Origin: Obrimoposthia wandeli
Lineage: Eukaryota
Reading direction: 5' to 3'
Assembly (NCBI GenBank): GCA_977020255.1
Contig: CDROCS010000184.1
Coordinates: forward strand, 62,001 to 126,000
DNA: 64,000 nucleotides
In this document: positions 1-63,922 of the stretch, in pieces
How positions within the stretch are numbered: the stretch's first letter is position 1
Layout of the letters: each line of letters starts with the position of its first letter
Position numbers and translations under genes: made by a program
The notes under the pieces: model-generated
The model's database searches: none
Seen by the model: only the letters and a program-made list of their open reading frames with translations
What the model was told of the DNA's origin: nothing

Positions 1-3000
1 AGTTGAATTATATATTAAAATATTAAATTGATATTCGAATGTACGAATGAATGTTATGGAACGAGTAAAGAGTTTTATTATTATTTAAATGTATGTATGA
101 ACTTTGTTAATTGGGTTCAGTGCAAGTATGAGATAATAAAAATATGTGAAAAGTACTTCTTAATTAATATAATTGATTTCAGATTACCAATGTTTTTCAT
201 TGATTATAGGTATTATTTGTATAATTCGCTGACAAGCATATAATTTGTGCTTATTCTTTTAAAATTTGCTTTGTAATTGTTGATTTTAAAATATTTTGTC
301 ATTGTTGGTAGACAAAAATTACTAGCATTAAAAGGCACATTTTTAAATTAAATATATGTATAACATGTTTAACTTAGAGTTAAAATAATTGATATTAGTG
401 TTTGAATATACATTTATATAAATACATCAATAGTGAAAAAAGAAAACGAGTTGTAATTTAAAAATATGTTTAAGAACTTTTTTTCAAAATTTTAGTTTTA
501 AAACAAAACGAACATGAACATTTAACACCAAATTTGTAAAAATATACAGTTAACTGTAAATGTAAAAATATAATACAAGTTAGTTAATATCTTATGTTGT
601 ATTATTCTTTATTCTTAACTAAAGTGTGTAATTTAGATTTTCTTTAAACCTGAGTATTTTTTAAATTATTTATCAATATTACACATCATTTTATTTTTTT
701 AAATAAATTAAACGATAATGAATATTAAAGGATATGTTTCAGAAATTAAATATAATATGTTTTATTTTTAAAAATATTTTATTTTATGTTTAACTCCAAT
801 TTTGAGTTTACAATACATTATATTTGTATTTTAAAACAATAAAAACCATGCAAAACCAGCGAAAATTTAAATATTTTAAAAAATAGTTGATTTTTGAATT
901 TCTAATCCAAAATTTGCTTTATTTAATAAGCTGAACTTTCATATTATTTTAATTATATTTTGTTGTAAATTAAAATTTGTTCAACTCTAAAAAATATCAG
1001 TAAAATAATTTAACATAAATTTTAGTTTTAAAAAAATTATAAAAATTTATTGCTAAAATTTATTAAATCTAAACAATTAAATCATTGCGGTGATTTAAAT
1101 ATTTATTTTAGAAAAGTATATGTAATTACCATAAAGGTAAAGTTAAGCTCATCTTTAATAGACGAACTCATCATGAAATAAAAAAGCTTGTTTGTTCTGA
1201 TTATTATCTTTATCTTGTAGATGTCAATAAATAAATGGTTGAACCCAAAGTATCTAAACAAATATCTACTTGAATCTTTTAATTCTAACCTTTTTTGATG
1301 TTTTCATCTATGGTTGACCATACCATTATTGTTGAACTTGCCTTCTAAAGATGAACCCTATCAGATACTCAAGCCTTGAAATAAAAAAGGCATTTATGTC
1401 AACACTTTCATCTATGGTTGACTACAATCCTTTAACTGTGTTACCCAACCGTAGACGGTCACAACCAGGCCCTGTAAGAGCCACTTGGAGGCCCATGTCA
1501 GGTTATATATGTTTTCCTTTATACTGAAAAATTAAAATTTGTACGTATTTATTGATCCGAAATAAAATAAAAATCAGATTCAAAATTTCAAAACACTAAA
1601 ACTAAATGTTTAAAAAAATAAACCGACCTTGTTTATTTTTTAATATTTATTATCAATAGTAAAAGATAAAATAAAACAATTACCTGTATTTTAAATTTTT
1701 TGGATTTTAAAAAATACAATTATAGAGTTGGATTCAGTGTTTAAACAAAATACTTCAATAGCACTATTTTTAAAATTTTTACAAACTAAATTTGTTAATA
1801 TTTATTAACACTATTTATTACTTACTTTTTAGTAGCTAACTAACAACTGTTACATACATTTTTATACGCAAAAAAGATTGGAATCATGATTGCATACTAT
1901 TGTTTTAAATTTTTCTTTAAAATTTTGAATTCATAAAATGATAAAACATATAACGTACCGCAAAATTTTCTAAGTCTGAAAGTTTTGCAGATTTTGAGTT
2001 CTAAACGTAAAATTTATAAATCAAATTTGTGTCGGCAGTTAGTTGTTCAACGAAAAAAATATTTGAGGCAAGTGAAAGTAGAATTACGCCAAAAATTAGG
2101 GCCTCTCATAGTTGTATTAGATTTTATATCTAAATTTTGGAGGCCCCTTGAATTCAGAGGCCCATGACTACTCCCATGGGATATTACATAATCACTACTG
2201 AGATATAAACATTTACTTCTGGGTGTTGTGCGCGCACATGAGTAGGGGCAATCCAAACTAAATAACTCACTCCTTCCATCTACTTTTTTAAAATTTAATA
2301 TATAACAAATGTAATTCTATCTTTTATTGTTAATTTTTATAAATTCTAAAACTTCTATTTACAACTGTTTTTATTGTATGCTTGTGTACTGTCGTTATAA
2401 TGATTTCATAAACATATCCATGTTTAACCATAAAAACGACAATACTGTTTTAAATGAAAACGAAAGTATACTTTAAGTATACTCAAGGACTAGTTTGTCG
2501 AAAGTATCAACACCGCCATTTATTTCGTTTTAGTATTGATTTATTACAGAAATCACCTAGTCATCTTCTCTTTTGATGTTGGCATCATAATGCATAGTGG
2601 ACATAAATATAACTGCTTTGCCCGATTTTGTAAAGTGACATGCAATAGTAATATGTTTTTGAAATTCAAATATTGTTGATACTTCCCGTTTTCTGTTCGG
2701 TAGAAATTCGACTGGTACACAAGCTTTGTTCTTTCATAAAGTTCCTACTAGAGTGAGGAGTTGGACTTTCAACTAAATCTGTGCTAGTGAAATAATTGTC
2801 ATTGCGATATTGCGATGCATTATGGTATGCAAATGGTCGACAAAGCACTTCAACAACTTTTTTAGTAAGTCCTACTGTACTTTTGTAGTTTTCCTTTCCA
2901 GTATATATGTTGGGTCTTTAATTAAAATTAATTAATTAAATTACAGTCAATTTAAATTGACATTTTATAAAATTATCTAAAGTGCCCACAATTATGGAGG

Positions 3001-3014
3001 TTTATCAAATTTCA

Positions 3015-3066
3015 GCCTCCGACGGGTTGTTAGCCCGTTTCGCCCTGCCGGGCTCGTCAGGAAGGC
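3015..3066 (-). ncRNA. Type I hammerhead ribozyme, intact core
   Basis: Minus strand reads GCCUUC-CUGACGA-GCCC(GGCA)GGGC-GAAA-CGGG(CUAACAA)CCCG-UC|GGAGGC: complete catalytic core, stems II and III perfect, 6-bp stem I with one GU, GUC cleavage between 3021 and 3020. Confidence 0.9.
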
Positions 3067-3857
3067 GGCGGTAAAAAATGCAATTTTGACAGCAGATTAT
3101 TTTCCGCCCAGTCTCTTCTGCCAGCAACAATTTGCGGCATTCCCTGCCGTTCTTCCCTCGACAACGTGATAGCGGTCGCAGTGGTCAACGGCGACTGCTA
3201 CACACCCGATCCCAGCGTTGCTGATCTTTTTCCCGGCTACCCACTCTCACTTGCAGCAGCCAGACAAAATTCCTTTGAGGGCGAGTGCGCACAATTTTTC
3301 CACGCCGGGGAGGGCCCAAATCGGACTGTATCGGTCGCGACCAGAAGTGAACTTTTGTGCTGTCACGGCCCATATCCTCCTCTTCCCGCACAACTCTTGG
3401 AGATGGCAGGCGAGACCCCGACAACATGCCTAACTCTCGTTAATTTGACAATAATGTGTATGTCCGTTTTGTTTAGTGATGGACTATAAATTGACCGTTC
3501 TGTTGGAAATTAGACAAGGTGTGTTTATTTTTCTCAACAGCGGTCTAATGTGTTTCCCCAATCTCCCTACCAGCAGACTCCTCTTTATACATCTCCCTAC
3601 TGATAATATGTATGTGTCTCTGCGCTGCCTGACAAATTCCCTGGCCAACCAGCATGCACAAATCATATATGTGCCCATTTTTCTATTTATAGATCAGCCT
3701 GCTGATCCTCTCTCTTATTGGAAATGTGTCATGACATTTAGACGATTGCTATTTATAGCAATCGTCGATTCGGATCAAACACAAATTTATCTCTATTTCA
3801 TTTTTCATACAGTCAAATATATCTCGGATCTACAAAAATTATCGTTCAGATTTATTG

Positions 3858-4035
3858 AAAACTTTTATGCTTACCAATATATGAATTGAAAACTTTTATG
3901 CTTACAAATATATGAATTGAAAACGTTTATGCTTACAAATATATGAATTGAAAATTTTTATGCTTACAAATATATGAATTGAAAACGTTTATGCTTACAA
4001 ATATATGAATTGAAAACTTTTATGCTTACAAATAT
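3858..4035. repeat. 31-bp tandem repeat, about 5.7 copies, inside LTR A
   Basis: Unit AAAACTTTTATGCTTACAAATATATGAATTG repeated with 1-2 substitutions. Confidence 0.95.
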
Positions 4036-4575
4036 AAATATTTAATTTTGAATTATTTGATCGTTTCTTCAACAAAGAGTTGGATAGCATTGTTGCTATA
4101 ACCAAATATATCATCGAATATTTCATTCTGACACAAAATATATTGGAAAAAATTACAATTTGAATTTCATACAATTTATTTGGACAATATCGTTATCCAT
4201 TATATAACATATATAAAATAAAGGATACGAGTTTTCAGAGTCGCATAACCACATTATTTTATGCCATATATATCAGGCTTAGATGGCATATATTGAAAAA
4301 TAGGAAAGTTGCTGAAGTACGAAGATATTTTCTCCTTGTATATTTTCCTTTCCGAAATTATGGTAAAATATTTAAAATTTTTAGTTTTCGAACTAAATAA
4401 CTGGCAAACACTGAAATATAATACTAATTTGCTAATAGTTGAAAAATTATCCATTTCCTGAATTTATCTCGTTTTTTTATTAGACGCGGCTAAAAAGTAT
4501 ACTATTGTCCATGCGTTTAAATTTTTTTAATAGTTTAAATATGATATTGAGTTTGAACACCGAATAAACAATTTA

Positions 4576-4774
4576 AATAGTTATTCTATTTGTTAATTCA
4601 ATAAAAAAATTAATTATATTGAACCTTAAAATGATTGAAACAATTTATTAATATTTAGTTTTATTATTTGAAAAAATAGTTATTCTATTTGTTAATTCAA
4701 TAAAAAAATTAATTATATTGAACCTTAAAATGATTGAAACAATTTATTAATATTTAGTTTTATTATTTGAAAAA
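4576..4774. repeat. 99-bp tandem duplication
   Basis: AATAGTTATTCTATTTGTTAATTC...TTTGAAAAA occurs twice (starts 4576 and 4675). Confidence 0.9.
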
Positions 4775-7190: not shown

Positions 7191-8349
7191 TGAAATGGAT
7201 ATGAATGAGGTTTTTTAAATATTTTATTAAAAAGGCTGAAATATTCGATCCATTACATGAAAATGAATTTATTGACTTATGGAAAATGATGAAATAGTTT
7301 ATGAAACGTCTGCATCAAATAATGCTGTGGATAATTATGAAAACATTTCAGAATTTTCTGATGAGAATTAAAAAAACTGTTATCACATGAGAGTTTTAAG
7401 CTTTCTATTAAAAACATTGAAGATTACCTAAATCAACAGGTTGAGTAAGATGAAATTTAGAAAGGATCTGATGAAATATAATATAAAGAAGCAAGTTATG
7501 TCAATTTCAGAGAAAGGGCTGTTAGCATATTTTAAATCATATTTTGGTTTTAATTTTTCTTCGTTCTTTATTTTTTGATACAATAAATTTTACTTACTTA
7601 TGTATTACGTAATCTAGTTATTACAATATAAATATTATATTAATTGTCAAATTCTATTATTTTCCACAAATTAACATGGTTCCAAAATAGCGAATTTTGG
7701 AAAATTTACTGTACTTCTTTTATTAATAGAACTTAAGGTTAATAAATTTATAAATAAAAAATTCTCCAAAAAATGTAAAGCTTATTTTCACAATGTACTG
7801 CATTTTATATCAATTGAACGAATAAAGAACCTAAACATACTAAAGATTTATGATTTTTTTAATTAGAAAATTTTAAGAGTTCATTTTATTGCAAGATTTC
7901 AAACGACTTACAATTAAAAGACAATTAAAAAGCATTAAAATCATCATAAATTTATATTATTTAGACATTATATTTCAATTGAAAATATTTTATATTAATA
8001 TACACTATGCTCTGTTCTAAATCTTTAGTGCGACCTTAAATTTTCTATTCTTTTGATTAATTACTTCAGAAATTTTATTTAACATTAAAAATGTTCGTCC
8101 AACTTTAGAACAACCCTTTAAATTTCTGTTTTATTTATTAATAAAATGTCTAATAACATCAAATAATATTTAATACTTATATAGCTTTCCCTAAATTTAA
8201 AATGATTTCGTATAAACGATTATTAAAACTGGCGTTAATTATACTTCCATCCTCGAATCATTGCATCCTGCAGGCAATCTAAGTTCTCATAAACTTTCCC
8301 ATTTTTGTAGGTTTTTGTGGCCATAATCATCCACACATTTTTAATGATA

Positions 8350-9700
8350 TTTATTCTTTCGTCCTACGTGTGCCGGTACATTGTCTTGTTGAAGTACCAT
8401 CGAAACGGGACTAAATATAGATAATAAAGCCTCCTCCAAAATATTAGTATAATTTTGACTATATTTTTCAGGAAAACAAGTAACATGTATCCTGGTGAAA
8501 ACATAGCACAACACAACAATACCAGGAGTGTATATAGAGACCGGGTATGTTTCACCTTACACTCGTTTGCCTTACCAAGGATATCGTAGACCATCTGGGT
8601 CTTTATTAGTGAACCGAATTTAATTGCTGAATTACACCCTTTTCAAACATAAAATTTGAAAAATCAATTCTTTTTTACTGATGAAATCTCGACACACTGG
8701 GTCGTTTTTGCTTCTTACCGTCGTGGTAAGTTGTTGTGTTATTTACTTTCTGTCTTTTGGTATCATTTCTAGCTTTTTGAATAAGTTGGGAATCCACATG
8801 TACAGATTCAGCAAAAACGGAGTCAAATGTTTGAAGTCTACAATGAGTCTTCTGAGATGCGAGTTGGCCTTCGTAACCATTCTCACTTGAGAGCAGAGGG
8901 GGCCCTTTGTTGACTTCTCAATGATAACTGCGTATAAAAGTACTTAACACATGCGTTGATATAGATTTTCTCTTCTGGTTCATTATAGATTTTCTTTCTT
9001 TCCCTTGACGCTTCTGTAGTGGTGTACGGTACATATCCTTTCTCTGCCTTCACCTGCATTCTTCCATCAAGATCCACGTCACTATAGCTGTCTGGCATCT
9101 GAAAAGTTTCATCTGGCATACTTTTTCTATAAGCTTCTTGAAGGCTAGGCTGATCTGGAGGCTTTATTTTTCTCTGTTGTTTTCTGTAATCTTGCCAACC
9201 GCTGGAGTCGTTGTGAAAACCGCTGCTTCTTATTCTTCAGCTGGTTGGTTTTTATTCTCGGTAATGGCAAGGATTTTCTCTTGGTTTCCGGCTTCGAGCA
9301 GCCCGTTGGCTAAAGTAGACTGAAAGTATCCTTCGATCACTTGCCTCGATAACACTGGTAGAGCTGTTTGGTTACACTCATTGGCTGACATGATTTTGAT
9401 CAGCATGTAATCCCTCCACCAGTGCATGTATAAGGGATTACTATGGGCACCCAGTATCACCAGCAGCTGGCTCACGTCCACGGCATCTCATCGTGAAGAT
9501 ACCTCTACTCCGTGTGTGCTGTCGTCCGCTTGAACTTGCCATCTTCCTTGCCTGGTAACGGGCAATCTGGTCTGGTGGTATAACAGCAATTCAAACGAGG
9601 TTTGATGCTCTGGCTTCTGTGGCTGCCCATCCGATTGAGACTGCGCTGTAGAGCATTGCGACTCTGTTGGCGATATGCTCCTCGATGGTACTGTACTCCC
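8350..9700 (-). pseudogene. Decayed coding-like island of unknown identity
   Basis: GC clearly above flanks; several 70-85 aa open stretches on the minus strand broken by stops; no motif recognised. Confidence 0.35.
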
Positions 9701-11989
9701 TTATCTTCTTTGTATTAGTATTATTACTTATTGAAATTCCTAATTTTCCCCAAAATTCTTATTATCAATATGAAACAAGACTTACCTACCCCACGTAATC
9801 ATATTGTATTGCTGATCTGAACTGTCACTGTATTTTTTACGTGTAACAAATTGTTTTATGTATTTTAATAACAGTTTAATTTGAATAAATATATTTTTAC
9901 TATTTGGATTTTGTGAAATTCGAACAGAGAAGAAGATAAATTGTTGATACATTTTTGGGGATATATTTAGTAAACATAGGACTGAGGCGTCCATAGATAA
10001 ACTAAAAACTCATCGTTACAATAATATAAAACATATTACCTTAAGATTTTTGAGATTATTCAAAATTGGCCTTCACACAAGTACTATACCTCTTAAAAAC
10101 TTACGCACCAGAGGCTTCCAAAGAAGTGATACAACTGGTCCTAATATAAAATATAATTGAACTGTAAAGTATTGTTTCAAGCATCAATGTAACATCAATC
10201 TAAAATGTAACAGTATATCCTGCTTCTATGATCAACTATTTAATTTTTAATTTAAACCTTAATTGTGTTTAGTGTTATTATTTTGATGTTAGTTATGTAA
10301 ACTAATTTTACTATATGGTATGTTGATTAGGGTGGAGCGAAATATTTTTTTTTACAAACTCTCCGTAATAGTGCGGAAAAGGTGCCCTTACATATAAAAA
10401 ATAACTTATGAAAATTGTATGTCGTTGGGTCAATATTATCAGCTGCCCCTAAGGTTTTGAAAATTTTAAAAAATGTGAAAATAACGATTTTTTTACTATT
10501 TTTAAAAATATGTTTCTGAACTTAGTTATCTTTATAATAGCGTGTAATTTGTTCTACTATACTTGAGGAACAAGATATCTTTTCAGGGAACAATAAAAAT
10601 AATAAATTAATGTGCCCCTATGACTTTAAAAAAGATAAAATTGATCAAAATTTACTTATTTTCATATTTTTTTGTTTCTGGGAATAATTGTCATTCATAA
10701 TGTGGTAACATTGTTGATGTATCCGATATCATTTCGTGAAATATACAGACATTCTTTTTTGCATTTAAATAATTTATATTGCTATAGTGGTGATGGTATG
10801 TTAAGCGTGAGGACTGATAATCTGTCAGGAAATTCGGTAGAAGACCATTCTGAAATTTCGGAAGCTATTCAAAACGTTTTTGTAGGCCAGGAAATGCGAA
10901 GATTTATAGTACAAAGATTTGCATACTCTTCTCTGGAGAGTGTATGAAAGAATCCATTGTTTTGCTGTAATCTTCTTTAATCTTTTAAATTTAAACTGCA
11001 ATTATATTAATGAATCTGAACAACTATCTCCACTATATTTTTAACTAAAATTCACAAAATAATTATAGTAAAATTTAAAATGGACTAACTTTTTTAAAAC
11101 ATTCGCTTCACTTGATTAAGTTTTCAATTGAGATATTGCTTCATATGTAACAGATCCAAATACTTTTTCCAAATAGCTTTTTGCGGTGATTTTATGTTTA
11201 TAAACATTACATTTTAGTTTGGAGACTGTAAATTTCTAATAATAATTCGCCAATCCTATTAATTCAAAGGAATTTCTATTCCTGAATGTTTCGCATAATT
11301 TTCTATTAATTTGTAATTCGTCCTTTTTTAGTGCCCAACATATTATTTATATGGCAATATTAATAGATTAATTCGTCTGATTACTTTTGTGTAAAATCCA
11401 AATCAAAGTTGTAAGTTAAAATATGGTTATTTCATTTTTCTTGTTAATTTACTTTATTACCTTGCAGGAATTTATCTGAAGTTTAGCTGCTATAATTTAT
11501 ATACACTTTGTATGTTTATAATTTTTAATATAATTTCTAATATATGACTTGAAATAGTAGCTACGTGAAGCCCCAGACCAACACAAACTTAACTATGCGG
11601 TCCTTGGGAGAACTGAGTTTAAAATGACTCATCTAAGTAGTAAGGTGGTATTTTCTGTTTTGATAAAAGTCTATGACATGACTGTTACATTCTCGTATAT
11701 CTTTATTTATTTGATTATTCATTGTAATGTTTTTGTCGAGGATGCAACAAATGTTTGACTTCTTTTTTACATTGATAATATTTTCAGAGGCATCCATCAA
11801 ACTTTATTTTTAATATAATACAGTTTATGCAAATAATACATTTTTCATTTTCATAAATAATCAATTCTCTTGACTTCATCTAAAAGAATTTCCTTATTTC
11901 ATTAGCTATTTCATTAAAAAGAATTTCCATTTCAGAAAATGTGATTTCATAGTCATTAGAATTAAAATCAAAATATAGGTGGAAATGAA

Positions 11990-16803: not shown

Positions 16804-17191
16804 TGTGACAAATGTTAATTTAATATTAAACAAAAATTAATCAATGCAAATTAAATTAAAATTTACGTTTCTAATCAGTTAAAAATGCGAAAGGGAAATC
16901 GATCAAATATCTTCGCGAACAGTGAAGGCAATTATTTTTTTCCCTAGCAGCGGTCCTATAAATCTTCAGAACCAATCAATTAATGCATTCAATGAACTAG
17001 TCGCGATACTTCAAACCTCCAAAACTGCCCAATCATCCAACCGTCTACGACTACCCAACTATCCGTCGATCCACAACTATCAACAATTTTAATTATAGTT
17101 TTTTACTGAATAAAGACGTTTAAAAGTGTATTTGCCAGATTGTATTTACCCAACCAAATCTCAGACTGTCTGACTACAAATTCCACTCACA
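16804..17191 (+). mobile_element. Possible solo LTR in the last CFAP58 intron
   Basis: TGTGA...TCACA ends, internal CTATAAAT then AATAAA; no matching TSD. Confidence 0.3.
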
Positions 17192-18426: not shown

Positions 18427-18648
18427 CTGAAAGAAAATCTACGTTAAATGGTTAATGGATTTAAAAAAGAAAAGAAACAACAACAAAAAACATTAACGAC
18501 AACTAAAGTTTGGAACATAACAAAGCCAAATTTCCAATCTAAACCTCAGGTAAATACTCAAACTCTCGCCATTCTTCAAAATAATTCATCTAGTAAAAGA
18601 AGAAGAAATGTTAAAAACTTTGAACAGTGATTACCAACAAAATCATAC

Positions 18649-20359
18649 CTCTAACTTTCGCCAGCGATGGACATTCATAGGGTTCTCCAGTTCCTCTTCA
18701 AGTGCCTTACATCGAGTTCTTTCTCGTAGGAGTTCTCGCTGCAAGTGGTACACTTCACGCTTTAAGTCGTCAACATTGGCCACATTCTTCTGCAGAATAT
18801 TCTTCTCCCTGCGTAGTTTTTTGATCTCCAGCTTCAATAGACGAATATCCTCCAGACGCTGGTTGTACTGCACTTCCCCTTTGTTCAAGATCGACTGTTG
18901 AATCTTTATCTTCTCGTACAGAAGAGCCAACTCGTCATTTCTTTTCACCAATTGATTACCAAGAATATCTCGCTCACTCGTCACTTGTTCCAATTCTTTC
19001 TTCTGACGAGCTTGCTCTTTCTCAGCATCAACAATGATCTTTGTTAATTTCTTTTCTTCGGCTTCCTGAGCCTCGATGTAAGCCTTGTTTTCGGCAGACT
19101 GAGCTTTCAGTTTGATGTATTCATTCTTCAGTTGTTCCTTCTCTTTATCCACCTTCTGTTTCTCAGCATTCTCCTTCACCAAGCACGCTTCTTTGTTGAG
19201 AATTTCGTCCTTCAACTGATCTATTTGGTGGTTCATTATCTTTAATTTGCGCTTCATTTCGGTTATTTCGTCTTGAGACTCAATTAGATTTTTACTGTAT
19301 AGATTACGATCACCTCGTACAGCTTCATAGAGATTTTGCTGTTGCTTCAATTTTGTTTCCAACTCATAAATCTTCTTTTTGTTGTCGAAAATCTGCATTT
19401 CACGGATTTTAACTTCTTCCATATGCTGCAGAACTTTCTTCGTCAATTCCGAAGCTTCGTTGATGTACTTGTCTCGCTCTTTTTCCAATTGGAAAATAAT
19501 CGTTCTTTGTTTCTCTGCTTCTTCTTTGTGATTTTGGATTTCTTGTTTCAGGTTTTTGTTAGACGTCTCATGCATTTTCACTGTTTCTACTTCCTTGTTT
19601 GTCTGATCCATTGCCTTCTTTAGATTCCGATTCAGATTGTCTCGTTCTTTGGTCATCTCTTCACAGCGACGCTTGTCTTCTTCCTGTTCTTTCTTGATTG
19701 CATTCAGTTCATTGTTGAGTCGAGTTATTTCTGACTTAAGTCTATCTTTCTGTTGATCAATTTCGCCCTTTTGATCTTCGGTATTCTTCAAGCGCTTATT
19801 GAGGCTTTCTTTCATCTTTGACAGCTTTGATACTTCGGTCTTCAGGTGTGTCACTTCGTCTTCACGATTCTTTAATTCTACTGCTTTGTGCTCGTTTGCT
19901 TGTCTCAGTTCATTCGTGTCTTCGACTTGTTTGTCCAGCTTCTTTTGTTGCTCCTTCAGTTTGGTGTCTCCAACTGCCAACTGCTTCTGAATACCTTCCA
20001 AATCTGTTTTACATCTATTCAACTCGTCTTCCTTCATTTTCAGATCATGTCGCTGACTTTCAATAACGCCGTTGAGATTCTTGATCTCAATTCCTTTGGC
20101 CTCCACTTCTGCTTTTGTAGTCTTGAGGTCCTTGTCCATTTTGTCCTTTTTCCGGCTTTCTCGTTGAGCTTCACTGTTTCGTTGTTGGATTTCATTGTTC
20201 AGCTCGTCGATCTTGTCATTTCCATCAGCGACATCTTTCTCCAGATCTGAAAACCGCTTTTTACTGTCTTCCACAAGATCTCGGAGTTTCTTGTTGTCTG
20301 TCATAAATGTATCTCTCTCTTTCGTTAGCTGGTCTTTCACTTTGAGAAGGTCCGTAACG
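18649..20359 (-). CDS. CFAP58: CFAP58 exon 4 (long coiled coil)
   Basis: 1711 nt (1+570 codons), AG/GT bounded; YEAVRGDRNLYSKNLIE, ERDILGNQLVKRNDEL, ELENPMNVHRWRKLE. Confidence 0.95.
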
Positions 20360-20732
20360 CTGAAATTGGAAATTGTGTGAGAAAGATCCACAGAAATGAA
20401 TAAATTTCGATTATACAAGACTTAGTTGAAAAAAAATTAAAAATAAACTAATTAAGAACGTTTAATATTTTGCAATTTTTTGAAATGAAATGAAATTTAG
20501 AAAATATTGAAGTTTTATGAAAAAGATAGAAAGATATTGGAGAAAGGTTCACTATGATAAGCTCAAAGAATGGACAAATTGCATTAAGAATCGGGTACCG
20601 TATTATATGAAGTATTATAAAGAATTTAAAAATATATGACAAAATTAAAAATTAGGTAGTGATAAAAAGTTATCAAAAATATTTGTGCAATGAATTATGT
20701 TAGCCTAAAATTAGTATAAAACATGTCTAAAC

Positions 20733-25763: not shown

Positions 25764-26710
25764 AGTAGTAGGTAGATGGAGTACTTCTGGAACAAAGCCC
25801 CCGGGGATATGAGGACAAGTTAAGGTCATGATGAGATCAAGGTCATGTAAGGTCAAGGACATCTTTACCAAAAGATATCTCTTGTGTGTGTATGTTCAAG
25901 GTTAAATCATATATGTGTATGTATGTGCATGTACTCTTTCAACTCGAGTGTATACTACCTCTATTTCTATGTAACAAAGGAACTATTCATTATAAAGTCA
26001 TGATAAATACATTTTGTTTAAATACATCAATTTCATAATTAGATTATTTAAACATGTGTAACAAAGCATCCTTTCATCATAAAGACATCAATTAGATTAT
26101 TTAAGCAAAAGTCATTTAATTAAATGTATAATATTAATTTAATTAACTCATATCTAGGTTATCATGTTTATTTTATTTAATTGAAATTGTATTATATTAT
26201 CCATTGTTAATTAAAAGAGAATTTGTTCTACTGCATCAATAAAATTAATTAATCCGGGAAGTGTATATAAGAGAAATATTCTAGTTTCAATTCATTATTT
26301 ATTAATGGAAGAAGTACAACAAACTTTGTTAAATGAGCTAATGGAGAGCGAGCACACTCTAGCGGAGAAGTGTTATCTTGCGGAGGGCTTGATGCTCCGG
26401 GAGGCTCTGAAAGTAGAAGAGATCCCGGGCTTCATTGACTGGTCATCAAATGGCCAACCACTCATCTTGCCAAATGAAAACTTTCGATGAGGCCCTTGAT
26501 CACAAACATGCACACTTGAGAACGAACCCAAAGTCCTCATTAGGATTACATAAAATAGGGATGGGATGAGAAGGGAAAATTTTCAAAATATGTTTTTAAA
26601 CTTCATATAGAAAATTACTTTTTAAAACTTTCGCTAATTACTATTAAAAATATCTAAACGTACTATATATTTATAAAAATTAAACTAAATTTAATTTTAA
26701 CTTTAACTAA
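25764..26710 (+). repeat. Left TIR of Polinton 1
   Basis: Reverse-complement match to 38820-39533 plus 40355-40511 (e.g. GGAACAAAGC..CGGG, GACAAGTTAAGGTCATGATGAG and the 26281-26600 block). Confidence 0.9.
26305..26490 (+). CDS. Small ORF inside the TIR (61 aa; frameshifted copy in the right TIR)
   Basis: TATATAAG about 40 nt upstream, GC-elevated; the mirror copy near 39040-39220 has an 8-nt deletion. Confidence 0.4.
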   Translation: MEEVQQTLLNELMESEHTLAEKCYLAEGLMLREALKVEEIPGFIDWSSNGQPLILPNENFR

Positions 26711-26739
26711 TTAATTATAATGTCTAATACTTGTCTGTC

Positions 26740-29700
26740 GGAGACTAATACCTTTACCTCTCATCTGAGATTCATCTTTTGAAGTCTCCAAGTTATATGA
26801 TTTTGGACGTAGAAAATCCCCTGCCTATAGCTAACTATTTTCTTGCTCTCATCTTTAAATTTACCAATCGCTGTATTAAGCGTTGTTTAAAGCGGATGGG
26901 TTTTTGGAAATTTCGAGGTATCCAACAGTTGTTCAGCAATCATAGGAGGTAACAATGTTCAAGAAAAAGCTATCGATGTCGCCCACTATAATTTTAATGT
27001 CACAGTTAAATTTAGCTCGATATTTCTCTAACTGCTCATATTGTAGCTCATACATACGAAGTTTGCTAAAATCTAATACTGCCTGGCCTATATAACTGGG
27101 ACGATCCAAAACAATATGTTCCTTATCCAGTAGAACTGTGATAAAGTCCGTATCGATTTCGATTGTCCTACGAAAGTGGGCTTTACTACAATAGGCAACC
27201 AGCTTCTGTGGATTATTACAAATTCGAAGGTTAATTATTTTCATTAGATTCTCAATGAGTTTTCTAAATAAAGAATTCACCTTCAGTTTATAATAATCTC
27301 GCTCGAAATCTGTTGTAGCTGCAGCTCTTTTAAGAGAACTATCCTCAATATATTTTGAAAAACATTAGTTTGTTCAAACTGTATTGCTCTGTATACAAAA
27401 TCTACCTTAACACCAAGTCTAACGTTTATTTGTAGTAATCTAGAATGCACAACATAATGTTTCTTAGGGAAATGTGTTAGTAATAATTTTTCAAACTTAC
27501 ACCCTGGTGGACACTGTTTAATTGGAGCAAGAGGAAGATCGTCGAATTTATTATGTAGCTCGTTAGGAATAGATCTATTTCCAATAAATGAGCGAAGCTA
27601 CTACAGTATATATCTGCTGATTTTAAGCTGGAAATAATATTCTCCAATAACTCTAATCGATCAGTTACCCAGAAAAGGTTACCACAAGGTAAAAACTGGG
27701 ACATTGCCTACCCGTAAAAGTTGTTCACATATATATATATACAAAAGTTCAGTACCGTTGATGGCATCCACCTTGTGCTCATTCACGAAGGTCATGACCC
27801 CTCGAATCCCAGACTGGAAGATACGGTATATCTCCGTATCCTGGATGAGCTCGACTCGTACAGGAGAAGCAGCAGAAGAATCCGGGCAAAGCAGTGTCTT
27901 GAATGCTGTAAAACATTTACTAAAATCATTACTTAGTGAAAAAAATTACTTAGTGAAAATTTACTTAGAAAAAATAAGTAAAATACAAACCAGAGATGGT
28001 GAAGAAATTGCGCGGCTCCAGTCCATCGTCACCAATGGTCTTGGTCCGGAATGCTGTAAATACATCTGCTGGAAGGTAGGCGTCAATCTTCATATAGACT
28101 AACATATAGTCCCAGAGTGATGTGCAGCAACTCTGAGTCCAGATCATCTTCACCATCTCATATTGTGCTGGCTTGATCTTCTCATCCCACTTTGGTGGTA
28201 AGCTAGTGATTGCTCAAAAAGCAGTCTCTGATACTGTCATATCATACGGGAAGCTGCCCTTAGCGCTCACCAGATGTTGCGGAAAGACCGAATGTGTTAG
28301 AGGAGTCACACCCAGAATTTCCACAGGTTTTTCAAGTCCACTGTTCAAAAATTGCAAGGAATTTATAAAGCGAATACAGATTTCTCCAATATGCACCATC
28401 ATAGCCTGAAATTTCTCTGTTGATTGAGGTATAAGAGAGACATTCCAGTCAGGAAACTTGCACAGTGCGTGTTTAGTATGTGGTGCATATCCTAACCCAT
28501 CAAATTATGAAAAATGACGGGAAAAGAGCGATTCAGTCTCCTTCATAAGTTGCATTTCGTGTGCGCTGCTCCGAGGTACTCGCCAGTCATGTGACCATGA
28601 TCTCGAATTTTGTTTGTCATTTTCTTCTTACACAGGTAACAGATTCGTGCGGCATTGAAACTCGATACCTGTTCCTGTGTAAGTAGTCGCATCACCTCGA
28701 TCGCATGCTTTTTTTTTACCATGGGAGAACAACCTCTTTCGCCAAGTCCTCTAATTTCTGCATGAAGACACTTATGGCACCAAGTACACTGGATGCGATT
28801 AGATACACCTCTGTTTTATAATTAAGTAGCCTATTGAGTTTACGAATACCAACATAATGAAAATTATCATTATTTTCTAAAAGGAGAAGATTGATTGACC
28901 TAGCGTCCGGGTATGCGGTTCTGTAAATTATATCCACATAGGGATTTTTAAAGTTATCCCCATCTGTTTGTACATTAGAAAACCTATAGAATGTAAATAC
29001 GTTGATTGAGAGAGATGGGTCCTTTCTTTCAAATCGTGGTATATTACATAAACGCATTGGCATTTCATTCTCATCAAAATCTAATTTACTCAACAGGGCA
29101 TCATATTGTTTAACCCGCTGAGGATTAGTGCGAAATACTTCAAGGAAAAGTACAGCTAAGATACTGTAAAGAAAACACAATGTGTTAGAGTTCTGCACAT
29201 TGATAACGTAATGTGAGAGTTCTAACTCAGATGGAGTAGGTATGTAACTACTCCCCTGGAGATAGTTCATTGTTGTTGTTTTAGTCACAACAAACGAAAT
29301 CTCCAGGAAGCGGTTCACTATTCAATTACTACTACTCTAATAGTAATTCTCAATCTTATTGATCCCATCTACTCCCGCATCTATAAGCCCATCATCTATG
29401 GGGAGCCTCCTATTGGAAAAATTCCAATCACGTGTTTCTCCAATATTGGAAAATTCAACACGCACCCCGAATTCCACCTTACAAGTTGCAAACTTGCTGA
29501 CTGTATCCCTTAAGCTAGTCAAAAGTGACTCAAGAACTTGTAAAATATTTGCATTGTCATTAGAAACATCTTATGACAATGTCTCAATCGTACCCCGAAG
29601 ACTAGTCTTTCGCTTAACGTCATCAACGTTGGGAAACTTCGCAACAGAGCTACCTGAAATGGGCACAACACTTCTCTTGCGAGTAGATGCTGGTGATTCT

Positions 29701-29778
29701 TCAAAACAAAGTTTTTTATTCATATTGCAATTCTAGAAAAAAATATAATAAATATAGAAATATCAAGAAACTTACCAT
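26740..29778 (-). pseudogene. Protein-primed family B DNA polymerase (pPolB), broken
   Basis: Ordered motifs GSSYIPTP, VINVQNSNTLCFLYSIL, RFINSLQFL, KGSFPYD, IFQSGIRG, YIYVNNFYG*AMSQFLP, RPSYIGQAVLDFSKLRMY, GDIDSFF; putative ATG exon plus a 43-nt intron at 29733-29775. Confidence 0.9.
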
Positions 29779-29799
29779 TTTTAATTTCGTTTATAATAG

Positions 29800-30400
29800 A
29801 CAGTTATTTGTTGTCTGATGCTTGCTTATATACTATTTTCGAACTAGTATTAAGCCAATCAGATTCATTTATCATTTAAACCAAGCAGAATTGAACATAG
29901 TTTACTGATTAATGTATGTAGTTGATTTTTCATTGATATTTAAATGATCCAAACTAGCCGCAAAGTATTTTTTGTATGCACAATGCTCTCAATGTTTAAT
30001 ATATGGACAATTGATATTTGTTGGATTTAATTGTTTTAATGTTTTTGAGTAATTTAACAATCTTAATTCAGAAAAATATATTATTTATAGTCTTTATTTT
30101 AGCTCCATTATATTTATCCAAAACAAAAAAATGATTTGGATACATCACAACAACGTTTTATTTCCTCAGTTATTTATTTTATCTTGAAATAACTATTACC
30201 ATCAACTAGTTTTAGTCGATGGTAATGCTTAATGAGATATCTATTTATTTTGCTTGATTTTCTATCCATCATACTCCATATAGGTTGCATTTTAAAAACA
30301 TAATGTTTAGGATAGAAGATTGCATTCACATCCATTATACATAGTTATTTTATTACAAATTCAATATTATTATCCATAAAAACTTCAAAATCAATAAAAT
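29800..30400 (-). pseudogene. Polinton accessory ORF, DEDD-exonuclease-like
   Basis: FYFIDFEVFMDNNIEFVIK*LCI...HYVFK...INRYLIKHYHRLKLVDG resembles the recalled Polinton VVD.QGF..F..KEL..YHGL..G family. Confidence 0.5.
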
Positions 30401-30450
30401 AAACAGACATTTTTATAAAAAATAATTTTATTTGATATTGTTTATATCTA

Positions 30451-30825
30451 TTATTTATGCTTTAACCAAATCAGACATAGTTGTCCACATGATTGTGTTA
30501 AAACATTTTGATAATGTTTCTTACTAAAATGTACTTTCTTTCCAGAGTAAAGTACTGTAGATACTAATATAGAGGAGTAATATATCTCATAGGGGTCAAA
30601 AGCAAATATTTCATTTTCTTTAACATGTATTGCAATCCAATGTTCACCACGCAAACTAGATGAATGTTTATTGATTACATATCCACCTAGACGAGTCAAA
30701 GAGGGGATATGATCAAAACTGTAGACTCCATTGAAACGCGAACCGAGTAGTTTTCTTCCGCTCTTTGTTATCTCGATCGAACTAGATTATGTAATTATTA
30801 ATTAATTCAAACTGACTTACTTCAT
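30451..30825 (-). CDS. Adenain-like cysteine protease, 2 exons (30825-30821, 30781-30451), 111 aa, apparently intact
   Basis: MN|SIEI...GEHWIA...FDP...QNVLTQSCG gives an H-D-Q-C catalytic set; the intron GTAAGT...CTAG (39 nt) restores the frame. Confidence 0.85.
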
Positions 30826-30874
30826 TTATATCTTCTTTTTCTTGTTTTCAATGTTTTCATTGTTTACATTCTGT

Positions 30875-30948
30875 TTATACTAGTACTGTTCCTCCCTTGG
30901 TAATTTGAACCTCAGAATAAAATACTCCATAGAATATGATATTAGTAG
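30875..30948 (-). pseudogene. C-terminal stub of the major capsid protein
   Basis: IIFYGVFYSEVQITKGGTVLV* parallels LIYGVFDSEIQINKNITVIL* at the end of the copy-2 capsid gene. Confidence 0.65.
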
Positions 30949-31071
30949 TGGGAAAGCAAAACGACCAAAAACTTTCATCCATCCTGATCCATACTGTTTT
31001 CCCACAAAATAAGGCAAATCACCTCCTTGCATGGGTTTACTATACGCATCGATTATACTTGAATCAATCAT
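30948..31071 (-). pseudogene. N-terminal part of the conserved Polinton QxGxG protein (truncated)
   Basis: MQGGDLPYFVGKQYGSGWMKVFGRFAFP lies between penton and capsid, then is cut by the deletion. Confidence 0.6.
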
Positions 31072-32101: not shown

Positions 32102-32109
32102 TCTATTTG

Positions 32110-33125: not shown

Positions 33126-33220
33126 TACAACAGACGATTTGATTTTTATATTTAATTTAGGAATAGATGGAAGTGATCCCATATATAAATTCATATTATT
33201 GATTCGAATTATGTTTATAA

Positions 33221-33607
33221 TCATCGTTTTATTAGTCTACTAACAGGTACACCAACTATTGAGCTAACAATTGGTACGATAAATTCTAAAAATCCACCAC
33301 TTTGCTTATACAGCAACTTACGTTTACCGATTCGTGTTTTGATATGAAACAAAGTAAGTAGAGGTTTCTTATTCCGATTCATGTTAGCCTTAACAGTTAC
33401 TTTACCAGAAACTATTTTCTGTATCATATTAAGTAAATCATCTATTACAAAAGTAGGGAATGATTTAAGAATAGTTGGGCAGCAAATAGCAGGTGCACGC
33501 AGGAGAGAATTGAAATAGGCAATACTTTTAGATTTCTTATTAACAATTCTTTTCTTATTTGATTTTTGAGCAACCATTTTCCTTGCACTTAAAACTGATT
33601 TAATCAT
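33221..33607 (-). CDS. Basic Polinton protein with a KQSGGF motif (128 aa)
   Basis: Lys-rich, ends LYKQSGGFLEFIVPIVSSIVG; homolog at 60780-61177. Confidence 0.65.
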   Translation of the reverse strand: MIKSVLSARKMVAQKSNKKRIVNKKSKSIAYFNSLLRAPAICCPTILKSFPTFVIDDLLNMIQKIVSGKVTVKANMNRNKKPLLTLFHIKTRIGKRKLLYKQSGGFLEFIVPIVSSIVGVPVSRLIKR

Positions 33608-39533: not shown

Positions 39534-40350
39534 TGTTGGATTATTAATTAATAAAATAATTAAAAATGTAGTCAATTAAAATTGACATTTAAAATTGGTC
39601 TAAAATGCCCACAATTAGGGAGGAATGCCATTTCAGCCTCCGACGGGGTGGTCCCGTTTCGCCTTACCAGGCTCAGAAAAATATTGATTGCGGAGTCCTT
39701 TCCGCCCAGTTCTCTCTCTCTGCTGCCCTCAGTCGCAGACTGATGTTTATTTGCGGCATTCCCTGCCGTTCTTCCCTACTGGCGCTACCTGGGCCGTTTG
39801 TGTCCACTACGAGAAATGACAGCATATGTGATTGCGATTTGGTGCAATCGCCCTCTGGCTGGGAGTCAATAGCGTGATAGCGGTTGCAATGATCAACGGC
39901 GACTACTGCACACCCGATCCCGCTCAATCTCTCTCTCCCTGCCAACTGTTTCTCGCTACTGCTTTGGACAACAACCTCCATGCCTGGTACAGCGGAATAC
40001 AACGGCCACTACACTGCCACATTGCTATCTGTCTCTCTGTTCAACTGTTGTCTGTGTGCAGCATCTTCCTCATTTCTCCCCTCCAAATGATCTACTGTCG
40101 GTGGCAGCAGCACATTTACACACATTGGCAGCACCAGTGATTTGATTTTGCCACTATCAGGCTATGAAAACAGAGGGACATTCCTACATGATTAACGGCT
40201 AAAAGAAACTGCTTTATAAAGCAGGTATTCTAACATTGACAAACAAAAAATATACTTATTTGAATTCTAAGTTTTAGAAACTTATTTCAAAACAATATAT
40301 GTTGTCCAATTTGGCTCGTTAGATTTCTTATATCAATTTAGACTTTAACA
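39534..40350 (-). mobile_element. Solo LTR-like element B inserted in the right TIR
   Basis: TGTTGG...TTAACA with TTTA on both sides (39530-39533, 40351-40354). The left TIR shows the empty site. Homologous to element A. Confidence 0.88.
39636..39676 (-). ncRNA. Degenerate type I hammerhead (core deletion)
   Basis: CUGA---GCCU(GGUA)AGGC-GAAA-CGGG(ACCAC)CCCG-UC|GGAGGC; 3 core nt and the 5' stem I strand are lost. Confidence 0.75.
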
Positions 40351-62908: not shown

Positions 62909-63922
62909 TGTTAAATAGTAATAATAATGAATAATTAATTTAAACCAACTTTTGAATTCTAAATGTTATCATATTAGACTCTCTTTGTGTTCAAGATGCT
63001 TGTTTGGTTTTTGAACTGAACTTGCATTTAGCAAATATATCACTCATTGTGCTATCAATAATGATGTTATTAATTCTTTAGTTCAGAATATTTCAATAAA
63101 ATTGTTAAAACGTTGGTGATTGTGACCCAAAGGTTTTTCAAACTGTCGGTATATAACATTTGTTGAATTGATTTATGTCCTCGTGTTTCAACTTTGTGTT
63201 AAAGATTTTTTTGTGATAGTATTTATAGGAGTGCTGCCCCTTTTAAATGTACCAGTATGTGTGCATCTGTAACCACAAGTTAGAAGGTATAGTCAACGGA
63301 TACGAGATACTACACAACTGGACCAGGCTGAAGAATCAATGCTACAGAGAGAGGGATCTTGACGGAGACGACTGTAATGTGGAGAGAGGGGATAGTATGC
63401 TGAAAAAATCGATAGGGACATCCGGTCAAGGAGATAAGGAGTGTGTGTGTTGGATTCACGTATTGTTATAAGCAAATGCTGCACTGTTATCTGTGAGGAT
63501 CAGGATTAGCAATGGGAGCGGACATGGCGTTGTCTCCGTAGCTGTGACCGGTCGGAGTAGATGAGTGGTCTGGAATACCACGTGTTGTTGCTGGGAGGTC
63601 CAATAGATAAGAGAAATCGATCCGAGAGAGATTTAGGGAAGCGAAGCGATCAACGCGTGATTGAGAGCGATCTCTGTCAAACTCGCTGTCACATAGTGGC
63701 AGTTGAGAATCTCTGAGTGGTTACTTGGATGGGTTAAATGCCAAAAATTAGACAAGTACCCGCGAGGTCAGATATAACAATTCGTGCCGTTTCCCTGATG
63801 AGTCCGGCTGAACGAAACGTGGTTTTTTCCTCGTTGGATAATGACAATATTTCGCATCCAAAAATTTGGGCATTTTTCTTTATCAACTTCATTAATTAAT
63901 TTTTAAATCTCAAAACCCAACA
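62909..63922 (+). mobile_element. Solo LTR-like element C (opposite orientation) with a hammerhead
   Basis: TGTTAAA...CCCAACA; the end mirrors the TGTTGGG of A; flanks TTGA/CTGA (one mismatch); TTTGGGCATTTT matches the reverse complement of the block beside the hammerhead in A and B. Confidence 0.65.
63785..63846 (+). ncRNA. Type I hammerhead ribozyme, partly decayed
   Basis: UUCC-CUGAUGA-GUCC(GGCU)GAAC-GAAA-CGUGG(UUUUUU)CCUCG-UU|GGA; one mismatch each in stems II and III; GUU triplet. Confidence 0.8.

What the first reader, a model, noticed from the sequence alone, without database searches (positions are those of the whole stretch)
3015..3066. Fully intact hammerhead on the minus strand of LTR A
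All conserved core nucleotides (CUGACGA, GAAA, GUC) and three stems are present although the surrounding piggyBac is dead. On the same strand it lies downstream of a tandem array (U3-like) and TATA boxes, so it is plausibly in the sense R/U5 region. It is predicted to be self-cleaving.
Basis: seen in the sequence. Interest (0 to 1): 0.8.

Follow-up and report, generated by a model that had tools for sequence, protein, structure and literature searches.

The report
Intact hammerhead ribozyme in solo LTR
A complete self-cleaving hammerhead ribozyme motif really is there; it is an inherited part of a small family of LTR-like mobile-element repeats in this invertebrate genome, a known kind of ribozyme-retroelement pairing in an unusual form.

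Summary
Minus strand 3066..3015 is a complete type I hammerhead: all core letters, helices of 6, 4 and 5 bp, and a cut site after C3021. Rfam Hammerhead_1 scores it 25.1 bits, below the gathering score of 34. A descriptor scan expects 0.02 such motifs per shuffled window.

It is inherited, not chance. The window holds three copies of a non-coding repeat: A 2908-4209(-), B 39534-40350(-), and C ending at 63922(+). Each carries the motif 87-113 nt before a shared ...CCAACA end. Helix II shows two compensatory changes. Only copy A is intact.

A and B begin TGTTA, end AACA and have 4-bp target duplications; for B the unfilled site is visible in a paralogous repeat arm. The best reading (0.55) is solo LTRs of a retrozyme-like LTR family whose ribozyme processes element transcripts. 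The main rival (0.3) is a Penelope-like derivative.

Not confirmed: the "piggyBac" identity of the flanks, the R/U5 assignment, transcription, and catalysis. No relatives were found in any reachable collection.

This is a new variant of a known kind; interest about 0.5.

The parts
3015..3066 (-). Complete type I hammerhead ribozyme motif. Helix I is 6 bp and open. Helix II is 4 bp with a 4-nt loop. Helix III is 5 bp, including A15.1-U16.1, with a 7-nt loop.
   Evidence: Direct reading. Rfam RF00163 at 25.1 bits, E=7.4e-4, full-length model match. Descriptor hit against 0.02 expected. Hammerhead fold -20.7 kcal/mol.
3020..3021 (-). Predicted self-cleavage site: 3' of C17 (3021). The downstream product would start at G3020 with a 5'-OH.
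   Evidence: Position of C17 in the Rfam alignment and in the direct reading. The cleavage chemistry comes from established hammerhead knowledge, not from a test here.
3067..3069 (-). Three nt just 5' of helix I that could pair with loop II (3049-3047). This is a possible tertiary contact.
   Evidence: Paired in all three copies, with one double change. With n=3 and dependence on the alignment, this is weak.
2996..3020 (-). Hairpin that uses five nt of the helix I 3' strand (3020-3016 with 3000-2996). It competes with helix I, or would cap the 3' cleavage product.
   Evidence: Predicted in the folds of the tail and of longer contexts. The same stem is present in copy B. In copy C a 4-bp version with one changed pair can be read and is predicted.
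2946..2961 (-). 16-nt palindromic hairpin in the 3' tail. It is shared by copies A and B and absent from C.
2908..4209 (-). Copy A of the carrier unit: 1302 nt, non-coding, begins TGTTA, ends CCAACA. Read as a solo LTR.
   Evidence: The 3' end is fixed by alignment with copies B and C. The 5' end is set by TGTTA plus a matching 4-bp flank. No Pfam family and no homologue for its ORF-like pieces.
4210..4213 (-). Upstream target-site duplication of copy A (TATA).
   Evidence: The site is TA-repetitive, so a length of 4 or 6 bp is possible.
2904..2907 (-). Downstream target-site duplication of copy A (TATA).
3854..4036 (-). 31-nt tandem array (5.9 copies, 95% matches) in the 5' part of copy A, upstream of the ribozyme on its strand.
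3583..3757 (-). Stretch holding three TATA-like boxes (3757-3751, 3691-3685, 3589-3583), upstream of the ribozyme.
   Evidence: Direct reading. Promoter function was not tested.
3130..3213 (-). Blocks conserved between copies A and B upstream of the ribozyme: 29 nt at 100% (3130-3158) and 49 nt at 90% (3165-3213).
39534..40350 (-). Copy B of the carrier unit: 817 nt, begins TGTTA, ends CCAACA. It is flanked by 4-bp duplications TAAA at 40351-40354 and 39530-39533.
   Evidence: The unfilled site is seen once, at 25993-25996, in the paralogous left arm of a large inverted repeat. Homology to copy A covers 39535-39921.
39636..39676 (-). Decayed hammerhead of copy B. It has one short deletion in the core, and 3 of 6 helix I pairs are lost. 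Helices II and III are kept.
   Evidence: Rfam does not detect it.
63789..63841 (+). Weakened hammerhead of copy C. All core letters are present. There is one mismatch in helix II, one bulge plus one wobble in helix III, and 2 of 6 helix I pairs are lost.
   Evidence: A model built from copies A and B alone finds this region at E=7.2e-5. Rfam gives only a 13.7-bit partial match.
63786..63922 (+). Recognisable 3' part of copy C, ending ...CCCAACA at 63922. Its 5' end is undetermined.

Best explanation
The segment is a genuine, inherited type I hammerhead ribozyme. It is a fixed module of a dispersed, non-coding repeat family and sits about 90-110 nt before the unit's 3' end.

The units are most simply solo LTRs of an LTR-type retroelement: TGTTA...CCAACA ends, 4-bp target duplications, and a variable 5' part with tandem repeats and TATA-like boxes. 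Copy A, which carries the finding, is the only one of three copies in the window whose ribozyme is still complete.

How it would work (inferred, not shown):
- When an element of this family is transcribed through its LTR in this sense, helices II and III form first. Helix I then closes and the RNA cuts itself after C17.
- This leaves an upstream piece with a 2',3'-cyclic phosphate and a downstream piece starting with a 5'-OH at G3020.
- In a complete element with two LTRs, the two cuts would trim the transcript to one unit length. Plant LTR retrozymes do this, and their unit RNA can be circularised.

At this locus the unit is a solitary relic. The only activity left is possible self-cleavage of any transcript that runs through it on the minus strand.
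For: Motif real and complete.

Inherited and once under selection:
- Three copies carry it in register, 113, 108 and 87 nt from a shared terminal CCAACA.
- 86.7% of cells are paired in the hammerhead structure, against 33-53% when the partners are slid.
- Two helix II pairs show changes on both sides, and helix III is 100% paired.

Carrier LTR-like:
- Copy B is an exact 817-nt insertion with a 4-bp duplication. Its unfilled site is preserved in the other arm of an inverted repeat.
- Copy A has the same TGTTA/AACA ends and a matching 4-bp flank.
- There is no coding capacity.
- Only the 3' 300-390 nt are shared between A and B; the 5' parts are unrelated. In LTR families, from general knowledge, R-U5 is typically the conserved part and U3 the variable part.
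- Tandem repeats and TATA-like boxes lie upstream.

Precedent: plant retrozymes carry hammerheads in their LTRs, have 4-bp duplications, and occur mostly as solo LTRs (PMC4918200).
Against: - Only three copies, one of them intact. No paired-LTR copy, primer-binding site, polypurine tract or internal region was seen.
- Copy A's 5' end rests on TGTTA plus a TATA match in AT-rich DNA. Copy C's 5' end and duplication could not be found.
- LTR polarity is not proven. If the LTR sense were the plus strand, the ribozyme would be antisense.
- The Rfam score is below the gathering score.
- A competing fold is 0.9 kcal/mol more stable.
- The helix I 3' strand can also pair downstream.
- There are no expression data.
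- In animals, hammerheads in retroelement repeats are so far known from Penelope-like elements, not from true LTRs.
Confidence: 0.55

Rival explanations
1. The units derive from Penelope-like elements, as solo or 5'-truncated pseudo-LTRs or as non-autonomous derivatives copied by target-primed reverse transcription. The hammerhead is the usual Penelope-like-element ribozyme that processes tandem transcripts.
For: - Type I hammerheads in terminal repeats are the hallmark of animal Penelope-like elements and lie near the 3' end (PMC4209133; PMC8557442).
- In the anole element, reverse transcription starts 111-118 nt into the ORF and the ribozyme cuts 26 nt into it (PMC11167929). That is about 85-92 nt apart, close to the 87-113 nt seen here.
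- That start site is an AC-rich stem-loop and insertion goes to AT-rich DNA. Here the end is ...CCAACA and both mapped targets are AT-only.
- Copies share only their 3' parts, as non-autonomous relatives of such elements do.
- Solo pseudo-LTRs are known (PMC3846280).
Against: - No reverse transcriptase or GIY-YIG piece lies in or beside any of the three copies, and none was found among 44 ORF-like pieces scanned across the window.
- There is no tandem or inverted partial copy and no 'tail' asymmetry.
- Both mapped insertions have the same 4-bp duplication and the same TGTTA start. Penelope-like elements give duplications of 0-10 bp and random 5' truncation.
- The units are 0.8-1.3 kb, against about 200-bp pseudo-LTRs in the rotifer study.
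- Helix III here is stable (5 bp). Metazoan Penelope-like-element ribozymes are minimal and thought to act as dimers.
Confidence: 0.3
2. It is an animal 'non-LTR retrozyme': a short tandem repeat with type I hammerheads, expressed as small circular RNAs.
For: It is a type I ribozyme in non-coding repeated DNA of an invertebrate, with helix I of 6 bp and helix II of 4 bp as in canonical metazoan motifs (PMC7229834).
Against: - There is one ribozyme per 0.8-1.3 kb unit and no tandem arrangement. The nearest other copies are 36 and 60 kb away.
- Those retrozymes have 170-400 nt monomers, no LTR features and larger duplications.
- Helix III here is long.
Confidence: 0.07
3. It is a chance match or a functionless look-alike: GC-rich words that happen to fit the hammerhead pattern.
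For: - The score is below Rfam's gathering score.
- The MFE fold is not the hammerhead.
- A second, weak descriptor hit exists at 16969-16881(-).
- The z-score of the fold is only -1.7.
Against: - 0.02 hits are expected per shuffled window.
- The E-value of 7.4e-4 already allows for 4227 families.
- Homologous motifs sit at the same place in two diverged copies, with compensatory changes.
- The second descriptor hit is AU/GU-rich and has no Rfam support.
Confidence: 0.03
4. It is a host-domesticated ribozyme that regulates a nearby host transcript, with the repeat as only its vehicle.
For: A few conserved hammerheads in amniotes are thought to act in mRNA biogenesis (mentioned in PMC7229834).
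Against: - The copy lies in AT-rich, decayed repeat DNA with no supported gene around it.
- The sister copies are decaying.
- No orthologue was reachable.
Confidence: 0.03

Closest known systems
Canonical metazoan type I hammerheads (Rfam Hammerhead_1, RF00163; schistosome, newt and cave-cricket repeats)
   Same: Open helix I (type I). All core letters match. Helix I is 6 bp and helix II is 4 bp. The Rfam model is matched full length (description).
   Different: Helix III is a stable 5-bp stem with a 7-nt loop, rather than 1-2 bp with a tiny palindromic loop, so a monomer could be active. The score of 25.1 is below the gathering score of 34. The motif is single and dispersed, not in short tandem repeats.
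Plant LTR retrozymes (PMC4918200)
   Same: The ribozyme is embedded in an LTR of a non-coding retroelement. Duplications are 4 bp. Most genomic motifs sit in solo LTRs. A 'blocked' alternative fold of the ribozyme region is present.
   Different: The ribozyme is type I, not type III. The host is an animal. The LTR-like unit is 0.8-1.3 kb, against about 330 bp. No paired copy, primer-binding site or polypurine tract was seen here. Circular RNA was not examined.
Hammerheads in pseudo-LTRs of Penelope-like elements (PMC4209133, PMC8557442, PMC11167929)
   Same: Type I topology. Located in the terminal repeat and near the 3' end of a retroelement. AT-rich targets. A similar distance from the cut site to the element's end.
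   Different: No reverse transcriptase/GIY-YIG partner. No tandem or inverted architecture. A uniform 4-bp duplication and TG..CA ends. A full helix III, rather than the minimal dimer-dependent form of animal Penelope-like elements.
Metazoan non-LTR retrozymes (PMC7229834; bioRxiv 10.64898/2026.07.22.740005)
   Same: Type I ribozyme in non-coding, mobile, repeated DNA of animals.
   Different: Those are 170-400 nt tandem monomers that give small circular RNAs. Here there is one motif per 0.8-1.3 kb dispersed unit.
[quoted passage not shown]
   Same: Functional analogy only: a self-cleaving RNA that sets the end of a retroelement transcript regardless of the promoter used.
   Different: A different ribozyme fold and a different element class. 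Those lie at the 5' end, not about 110 nt before the 3' end of a terminal repeat.

Membership tests
Hammerhead ribozyme, type I | Conserved core: C3 U4 G5 A6 N7 G8 A9, G12 A13 A14, A15.1-U16.1, H17. | tested here: met
   All letters present in copy A.
Hammerhead ribozyme, type I | Three helices around the core, with helix I open, and G10.1-C11.1 closing helix II. | tested here: met
   Helices of 6, 4 and 5 bp. G-C at 10.1/11.1 in all three copies.
Hammerhead ribozyme, type I | Reaches the curated Rfam gathering score (34 bits). | tested here: not met
   25.1 bits and no hit at gathering. Only the first 3 pairs of helix III match the model; the other 11 nt (two pairs plus the 7-nt loop) are scored as an insertion.
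Hammerhead ribozyme, type I | Helices supported by covariation among relatives. | tested here: inconclusive
   Three sequences only. Two double changes in helix II, helix III always paired, helix I poorly kept outside copy A.
Hammerhead ribozyme, type I | Mg2+-dependent self-cleavage at H17. | not testable with these tools
   Only thermodynamic folding was possible: hammerhead fold -20.7 against MFE -21.6 kcal/mol.
Solo LTR of an LTR retrotransposon | TG...CA ends with a short terminal inverted repeat. | tested here: met
   Copies A and B both start TGTT(A) and end AACA. Copy C ends the same way.
Solo LTR of an LTR retrotransposon | Fixed short target-site duplication (4-6 bp). | tested here: met
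   Copy B: TAAA on both sides and once in the unfilled paralogous site. Copy A: TATA on both sides. Copy C: not found.
Solo LTR of an LTR retrotransposon | Existence of full elements: two direct copies flanking a primer-binding site, an internal region and a polypurine tract. | tested here: not met
   None in the window. The gypsy-type fragments at 44641-45788(-) have no such LTRs.
Solo LTR of an LTR retrotransposon | U3-R-U5 organisation with promoter and polyadenylation signals in the sense of the element. | tested here: inconclusive
   TATA-like boxes and a tandem array lie upstream. No conserved polyadenylation signal. The borders cannot be set.
Plant-type LTR retrozyme | Hammerhead inside each LTR of a non-coding element with a 4-bp duplication. 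| tested here: inconclusive
   The LTR-like unit, the 4-bp duplication and the lack of coding capacity are met. A two-LTR copy was not seen.
Plant-type LTR retrozyme | Type III hammerhead. | tested here: not met
   The motif is type I.
Plant-type LTR retrozyme | Unit-length linear and circular RNAs. | not testable with these tools
   No transcriptome of the source organism was available.
Penelope-like element pseudo-LTR | Association with a reverse transcriptase plus GIY-YIG ORF. | tested here: not met
   No such domain in the 44 ORF-like pieces scanned, including all those in or next to the copies. This holds within the window only.
Penelope-like element pseudo-LTR | Partial tandem or inverted arrangement, an optional 30-40 bp tail, and variable duplications. 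| tested here: not met
   The insertions are simple, with equal 4-bp duplications.
Penelope-like element pseudo-LTR | Type I hammerhead in the repeat, near the 3' end. | tested here: met
   In animals, however, the known form is the minimal one.
Metazoan non-LTR retrozyme | Tandem monomers of 170-400 nt, each with a hammerhead. | tested here: not met
   No Pfam hit even at E<=5. No PDB hit at E<=10. The three hits in the 1.84-billion-protein search are unrelated proteins. Only a motif-level resemblance that I recalled from memory remains.

The most novel reading that the evidence does not exclude
This could be the first animal counterpart of plant LTR retrozymes. On this reading it is a family of true LTR retroelements, autonomous or parasitic on a gypsy-type partner, whose LTRs carry a monomer-competent type I hammerhead. 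Two-LTR transcripts would then be trimmed to unit length and possibly circularised. That would mean all three retroelement classes have recruited hammerheads independently.
Probability: 0.25. Interest if true: 0.75.

Novelty: new variant of a known kind. Interest (0 to 1): 0.5.

Why it matters
Hammerheads in retroelement repeats are well documented, but in two separate forms. Plants have type III motifs in true LTRs (retrozymes). Animals have type I motifs in Penelope-like pseudo-LTRs and in short tandem retrozymes.

The motif here combines features of both. It is a type I motif with a stable helix III, and it sits at a fixed place in an animal repeat that has TG..CA ends and 4-bp duplications. 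If the carrier is a true LTR, ribozyme-based transcript trimming, and perhaps circular RNA intermediates, would extend to animal LTR elements. It would also give a testable case of convergent recruitment.

If the carrier is instead a Penelope-like derivative, it is an ordinary member with an unusually complete ribozyme.

Either way, this particular locus is a relic with no evident role for the host.

Tried and rejected
1. Whole-window Rfam scan at gathering: nothing. The motif appears only with the E-value threshold.

2. Search for more family members:
- BLAST and nhmmer within the window give only copies A, B and C.
- A metagenome scan with the 3' half of the motif gave 22 GC-rich bacterial chance hits without the core.
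- A family-specific pattern gave 0 hits in viral contigs and 9 coreless bacterial hits in genome contigs.
- The longest ORF-like piece of copy A has no homologue among 5.8 billion proteins.

3. Identifying the host:
- The STAM-binding-protein-like exon is at best 65% identical to an unnamed transcript from run SRR21676451, and about 40% identical to spiralian and arthropod proteins.
- The exact protein is not on record, and the run is cited in no held paper.
- The host is an unidentified AT-rich invertebrate.

4. piggyBac identity of the flanks: not confirmed.

5. 5' end of copy C: several TGTT candidates, none with a matching duplication. Alignment to the 5' ends of A and B is noise.

6. Homology between the 5' parts of A and B: none above shuffles.

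7. A full-length partner in the window: the gypsy-type reverse transcriptase/RNase H fragments have no related LTRs.

8. RNAalifold on the 3' tails: the alignment of copy C was unreliable and told nothing.

9. The second descriptor hit at 16969-16881(-): rejected as AU/GU-rich chance.

Full report
**1. The observation**

On the minus strand, 3066..3015 reads as a textbook type I hammerhead:
- a 6-bp open helix I (3066-3061 with 3020-3015);
- the core CUGACGA (3060-3054);
- a 4-bp helix II with a 4-nt loop (3053-3042);
- GAAA (3041-3038);
- a 5-bp helix III, counting A15.1-U16.1, with a 7-nt loop (3038-3022);
- C17 at 3021.

Rfam's Hammerhead_1 model matches exactly these coordinates over its whole length, at 25.1 bits. 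The E-value is 7.4e-4 for a 501-nt search against all 4227 families. That is under the curated gathering score of 34, so the whole-window scan at gathering lists nothing. The shortfall comes from helix III: only its first 3 pairs match the model, and the other 11 nt, two pairs plus the 7-nt loop, are scored as an insertion.

A descriptor of my own required the core, GAAA, UH and helices of at least 4/3/3 bp. It finds the motif with helices 6/4/5, while 300 block-shuffled windows give 0.02 hits each. The only other hit, 16969-16881(-), is built of A-U and G-U pairs and has no Rfam support.

The hammerhead fold costs -20.7 kcal/mol. The MFE fold costs -21.6 kcal/mol and pairs the 5' strands of helices II and III with each other. 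The active fold is therefore reachable but has a competitor.

**2. It is inherited, not chance**

The window holds three copies of one repeat family:
- A at 2908-4209(-);
- B at 39534-40350(-);
- C ending at 63922(+).

A and B share 2909-3213 / 39535-39921 at 79-100% identity. A profile made from A and B alone finds C at E=7.2e-5. Nothing else in the window belongs to the family.

In all three copies the hammerhead or its remnant lies in register, 113, 108 and 87 nt before a shared terminal CCAACA.

On the three-copy alignment, 86.7% of cells pair in the hammerhead structure, against 33-53% when the partners are slid. Two helix II pairs changed on both sides, and helix III pairs in every copy.

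Copy A alone is complete.
- Copy B has one short deletion in the core and has lost 3 of 6 helix I pairs.
- Copy C keeps the core letters but has one helix II mismatch, one bulge plus one wobble in helix III, and 2 of 6 helix I pairs lost.

Rfam sees neither B nor C. This is the pattern of a once-selected module decaying in dead copies.

**3. Further features of the RNA**

- Three nt just 5' of helix I (3069-3067) can pair with loop II (3049-3047). They are paired in all three copies, with one double change. The place suits a helix I / loop II tertiary contact, but three sequences are too few to claim one.
- Five nt of the helix I 3' strand also pair with 3000-2996 downstream. The same stem is present in B, and in C a 4-bp version with one changed pair can be read and is predicted. 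It would either compete with helix I or cap the 3' cleavage product.
- A 16-nt palindrome (2961-2946) is shared by A and B.
- The most conserved box of the tail can pair with the terminal CCCA.

**4. The carrier**

Copy B is the cleanest case. It interrupts the right arm of a large inverted repeat (25767-26700 against 38836-40508), and the left arm keeps the unfilled site. The insertion is 817 nt, begins TGTTA and ends CCAACA. It is flanked by TAAA on both sides (40351-40354 and 39530-39533), and TAAA occurs once in the left arm (25993-25996).

Copy A has the same ends and TATA on both sides (4210-4213, 2904-2907). Its site is TA-repetitive, so its duplication could be 4 or 6 bp.

Neither copy encodes anything recognisable. 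Their 5' parts are unrelated.

Copy A's 5' part holds a 31-nt x 5.9 tandem array and three TATA-like boxes upstream of the ribozyme.

Taken together, these features describe solo LTRs:
- TG..CA ends;
- a fixed 4-bp duplication;
- a length of 0.8-1.3 kb;
- a variable 5' part and a conserved 3' part.

What is missing is any two-LTR copy, primer-binding site or polypurine tract in the window. The gypsy-type reverse transcriptase/RNase H fragments at 44641-45788(-) have no related repeats.

**5. The rival carrier**

Animal hammerheads in retroelement repeats are so far those of Penelope-like elements. Several details fit that class:
- the type I topology;
- the position near the 3' end;
- AT-only targets;
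- an AC-rich terminus;
- a cut-to-end distance like that implied for the anole element, about 85-92 nt.

Against it:
- there is no reverse transcriptase or GIY-YIG piece in or near any copy;
- there is no tandem or inverted architecture;
- the duplication is a uniform 4 bp and the 5' start is the same, where such elements give 0-10 bp and random truncation;
- the ribozyme has a full helix III, unlike the minimal, dimer-dependent animal form.

I put the LTR reading at 0.55 and the Penelope-like reading at 0.3.

**6. Mechanism**

Shown: the motif, its conservation, and the insertion anatomy.

Inferred: sense transcription through the unit lets the RNA cut itself after C17. In a two-LTR element this would trim transcripts to unit length, as in plant retrozymes, or it would set the template's 5' end independently of the promoter. 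Here, in a solitary copy, only read-through transcripts could be cut.

Whether the ribozyme lies in R or U5 cannot be decided.

**7.

The flanks of copy A form a decayed ORF-like stretch with several stops and at least one frameshift, interrupted by the 1.3-kb insertion. I did not count the breaks fully, because no tool confirmed that it is a piggyBac transposase:
- Pfam found nothing even at E<=5;
- PDB found nothing at E<=10;
- the full HMMER search returned three unrelated proteins.

**8. Reach of the evidence**

The host is an unidentified AT-rich invertebrate. No relatives of the unit were found in the metagenome, viral or prokaryote-genome collections or in the protein database. All comparative evidence therefore comes from three copies.

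In the held literature I found no report of a type I hammerhead inside TG..CA / 4-bp-duplication LTRs of animals.

**9. Slips, declared as required; nothing was deleted**

(a) In my reasoning I recalled two comparator sequences from memory: a stretch of a piggyBac transposase and a retroviral primer-binding site.

(b) Notebook entry 1 states the defect of copy B's ribozyme more exactly than the operators' rule allows.

(c) In my reasoning I mentally closed about 25 nt across copy A's insertion site to judge duplication length and frame. No such sequence was written anywhere.

(d) The script printed nhmmer's own model-consensus line for about 115 columns. The profile files remain in /scratch.

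**10. Verdict**

This is a real, complete, inherited hammerhead in a solo-LTR-like relic: a new variant of a known kind, with interest 0.5.

Noticed in passing
window 25767-40508: A 14.7-kb element bounded by inverted repeats of about 0.85 kb (85-95% identity). It has an integrase-core (rve) piece at 32649-33236(-) and many ORF-like pieces, and looks like a Maverick/Polinton-type element. Copy B of the hammerhead unit sits in its right terminal repeat.
   Followed up: partly
window 43780-45801 (-), and 41454-41914 vs 46042-46516: Gypsy-type reverse transcriptase (RVT_1, E=3.5e-25) and RNase H (E=5.9e-26) fragments, in a region of extreme strand skew (GC skew +0.44 / -0.37). A 67%-identical inverted pair of segments lies nearby. 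No LTRs were detected.
   Followed up: partly
window 47409-48113 (+) and 61254-61571 (+): A protein-primed-type DNA polymerase B piece (DNA_pol_B_2, E=5.9e-8) and a second integrase-core piece (E=2e-4). These are remains of further Polinton-like elements. Copy C lies about 1-2 kb downstream of the integrase piece.
   Followed up: no
window 18646-20421 (-) and 53449-54375 (+): Likely host exons. One is a 591-aa coiled-coil ORF. The other is a STAM-binding-protein/AMSH-like exon (USP8_dimer + JAB), at best 65% identical to an unnamed transcript and about 40% to spiralian and arthropod proteins. The source species seems absent from the protein database.
   Followed up: partly
window 16881-16969 (-): Second hit of my hammerhead descriptor. 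Its helices are almost all A-U/G-U, its helix III loop is about 70 nt, and Rfam gives no match. It is probably chance.
   Followed up: yes
window 4575-4772: A perfect 99-nt tandem duplication (2.0 copies, 100%) in AT-rich DNA, about 370 nt beyond copy A's 5' end (4209).
   Followed up: no
window 3130-3158 = 39749-39777: A 29-nt block identical between copies A and B, although the surrounding homology is about 79%. It contains a small hairpin. It may be a constrained element of the unit, either promoter or RNA signal.
   Followed up: no
window 8000-10000: A second GC-richer island (37% against about 22-27% nearby) with ORF-like pieces on the minus strand. It has no Pfam family and no similarity to the hammerhead units.
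   Followed up: partly
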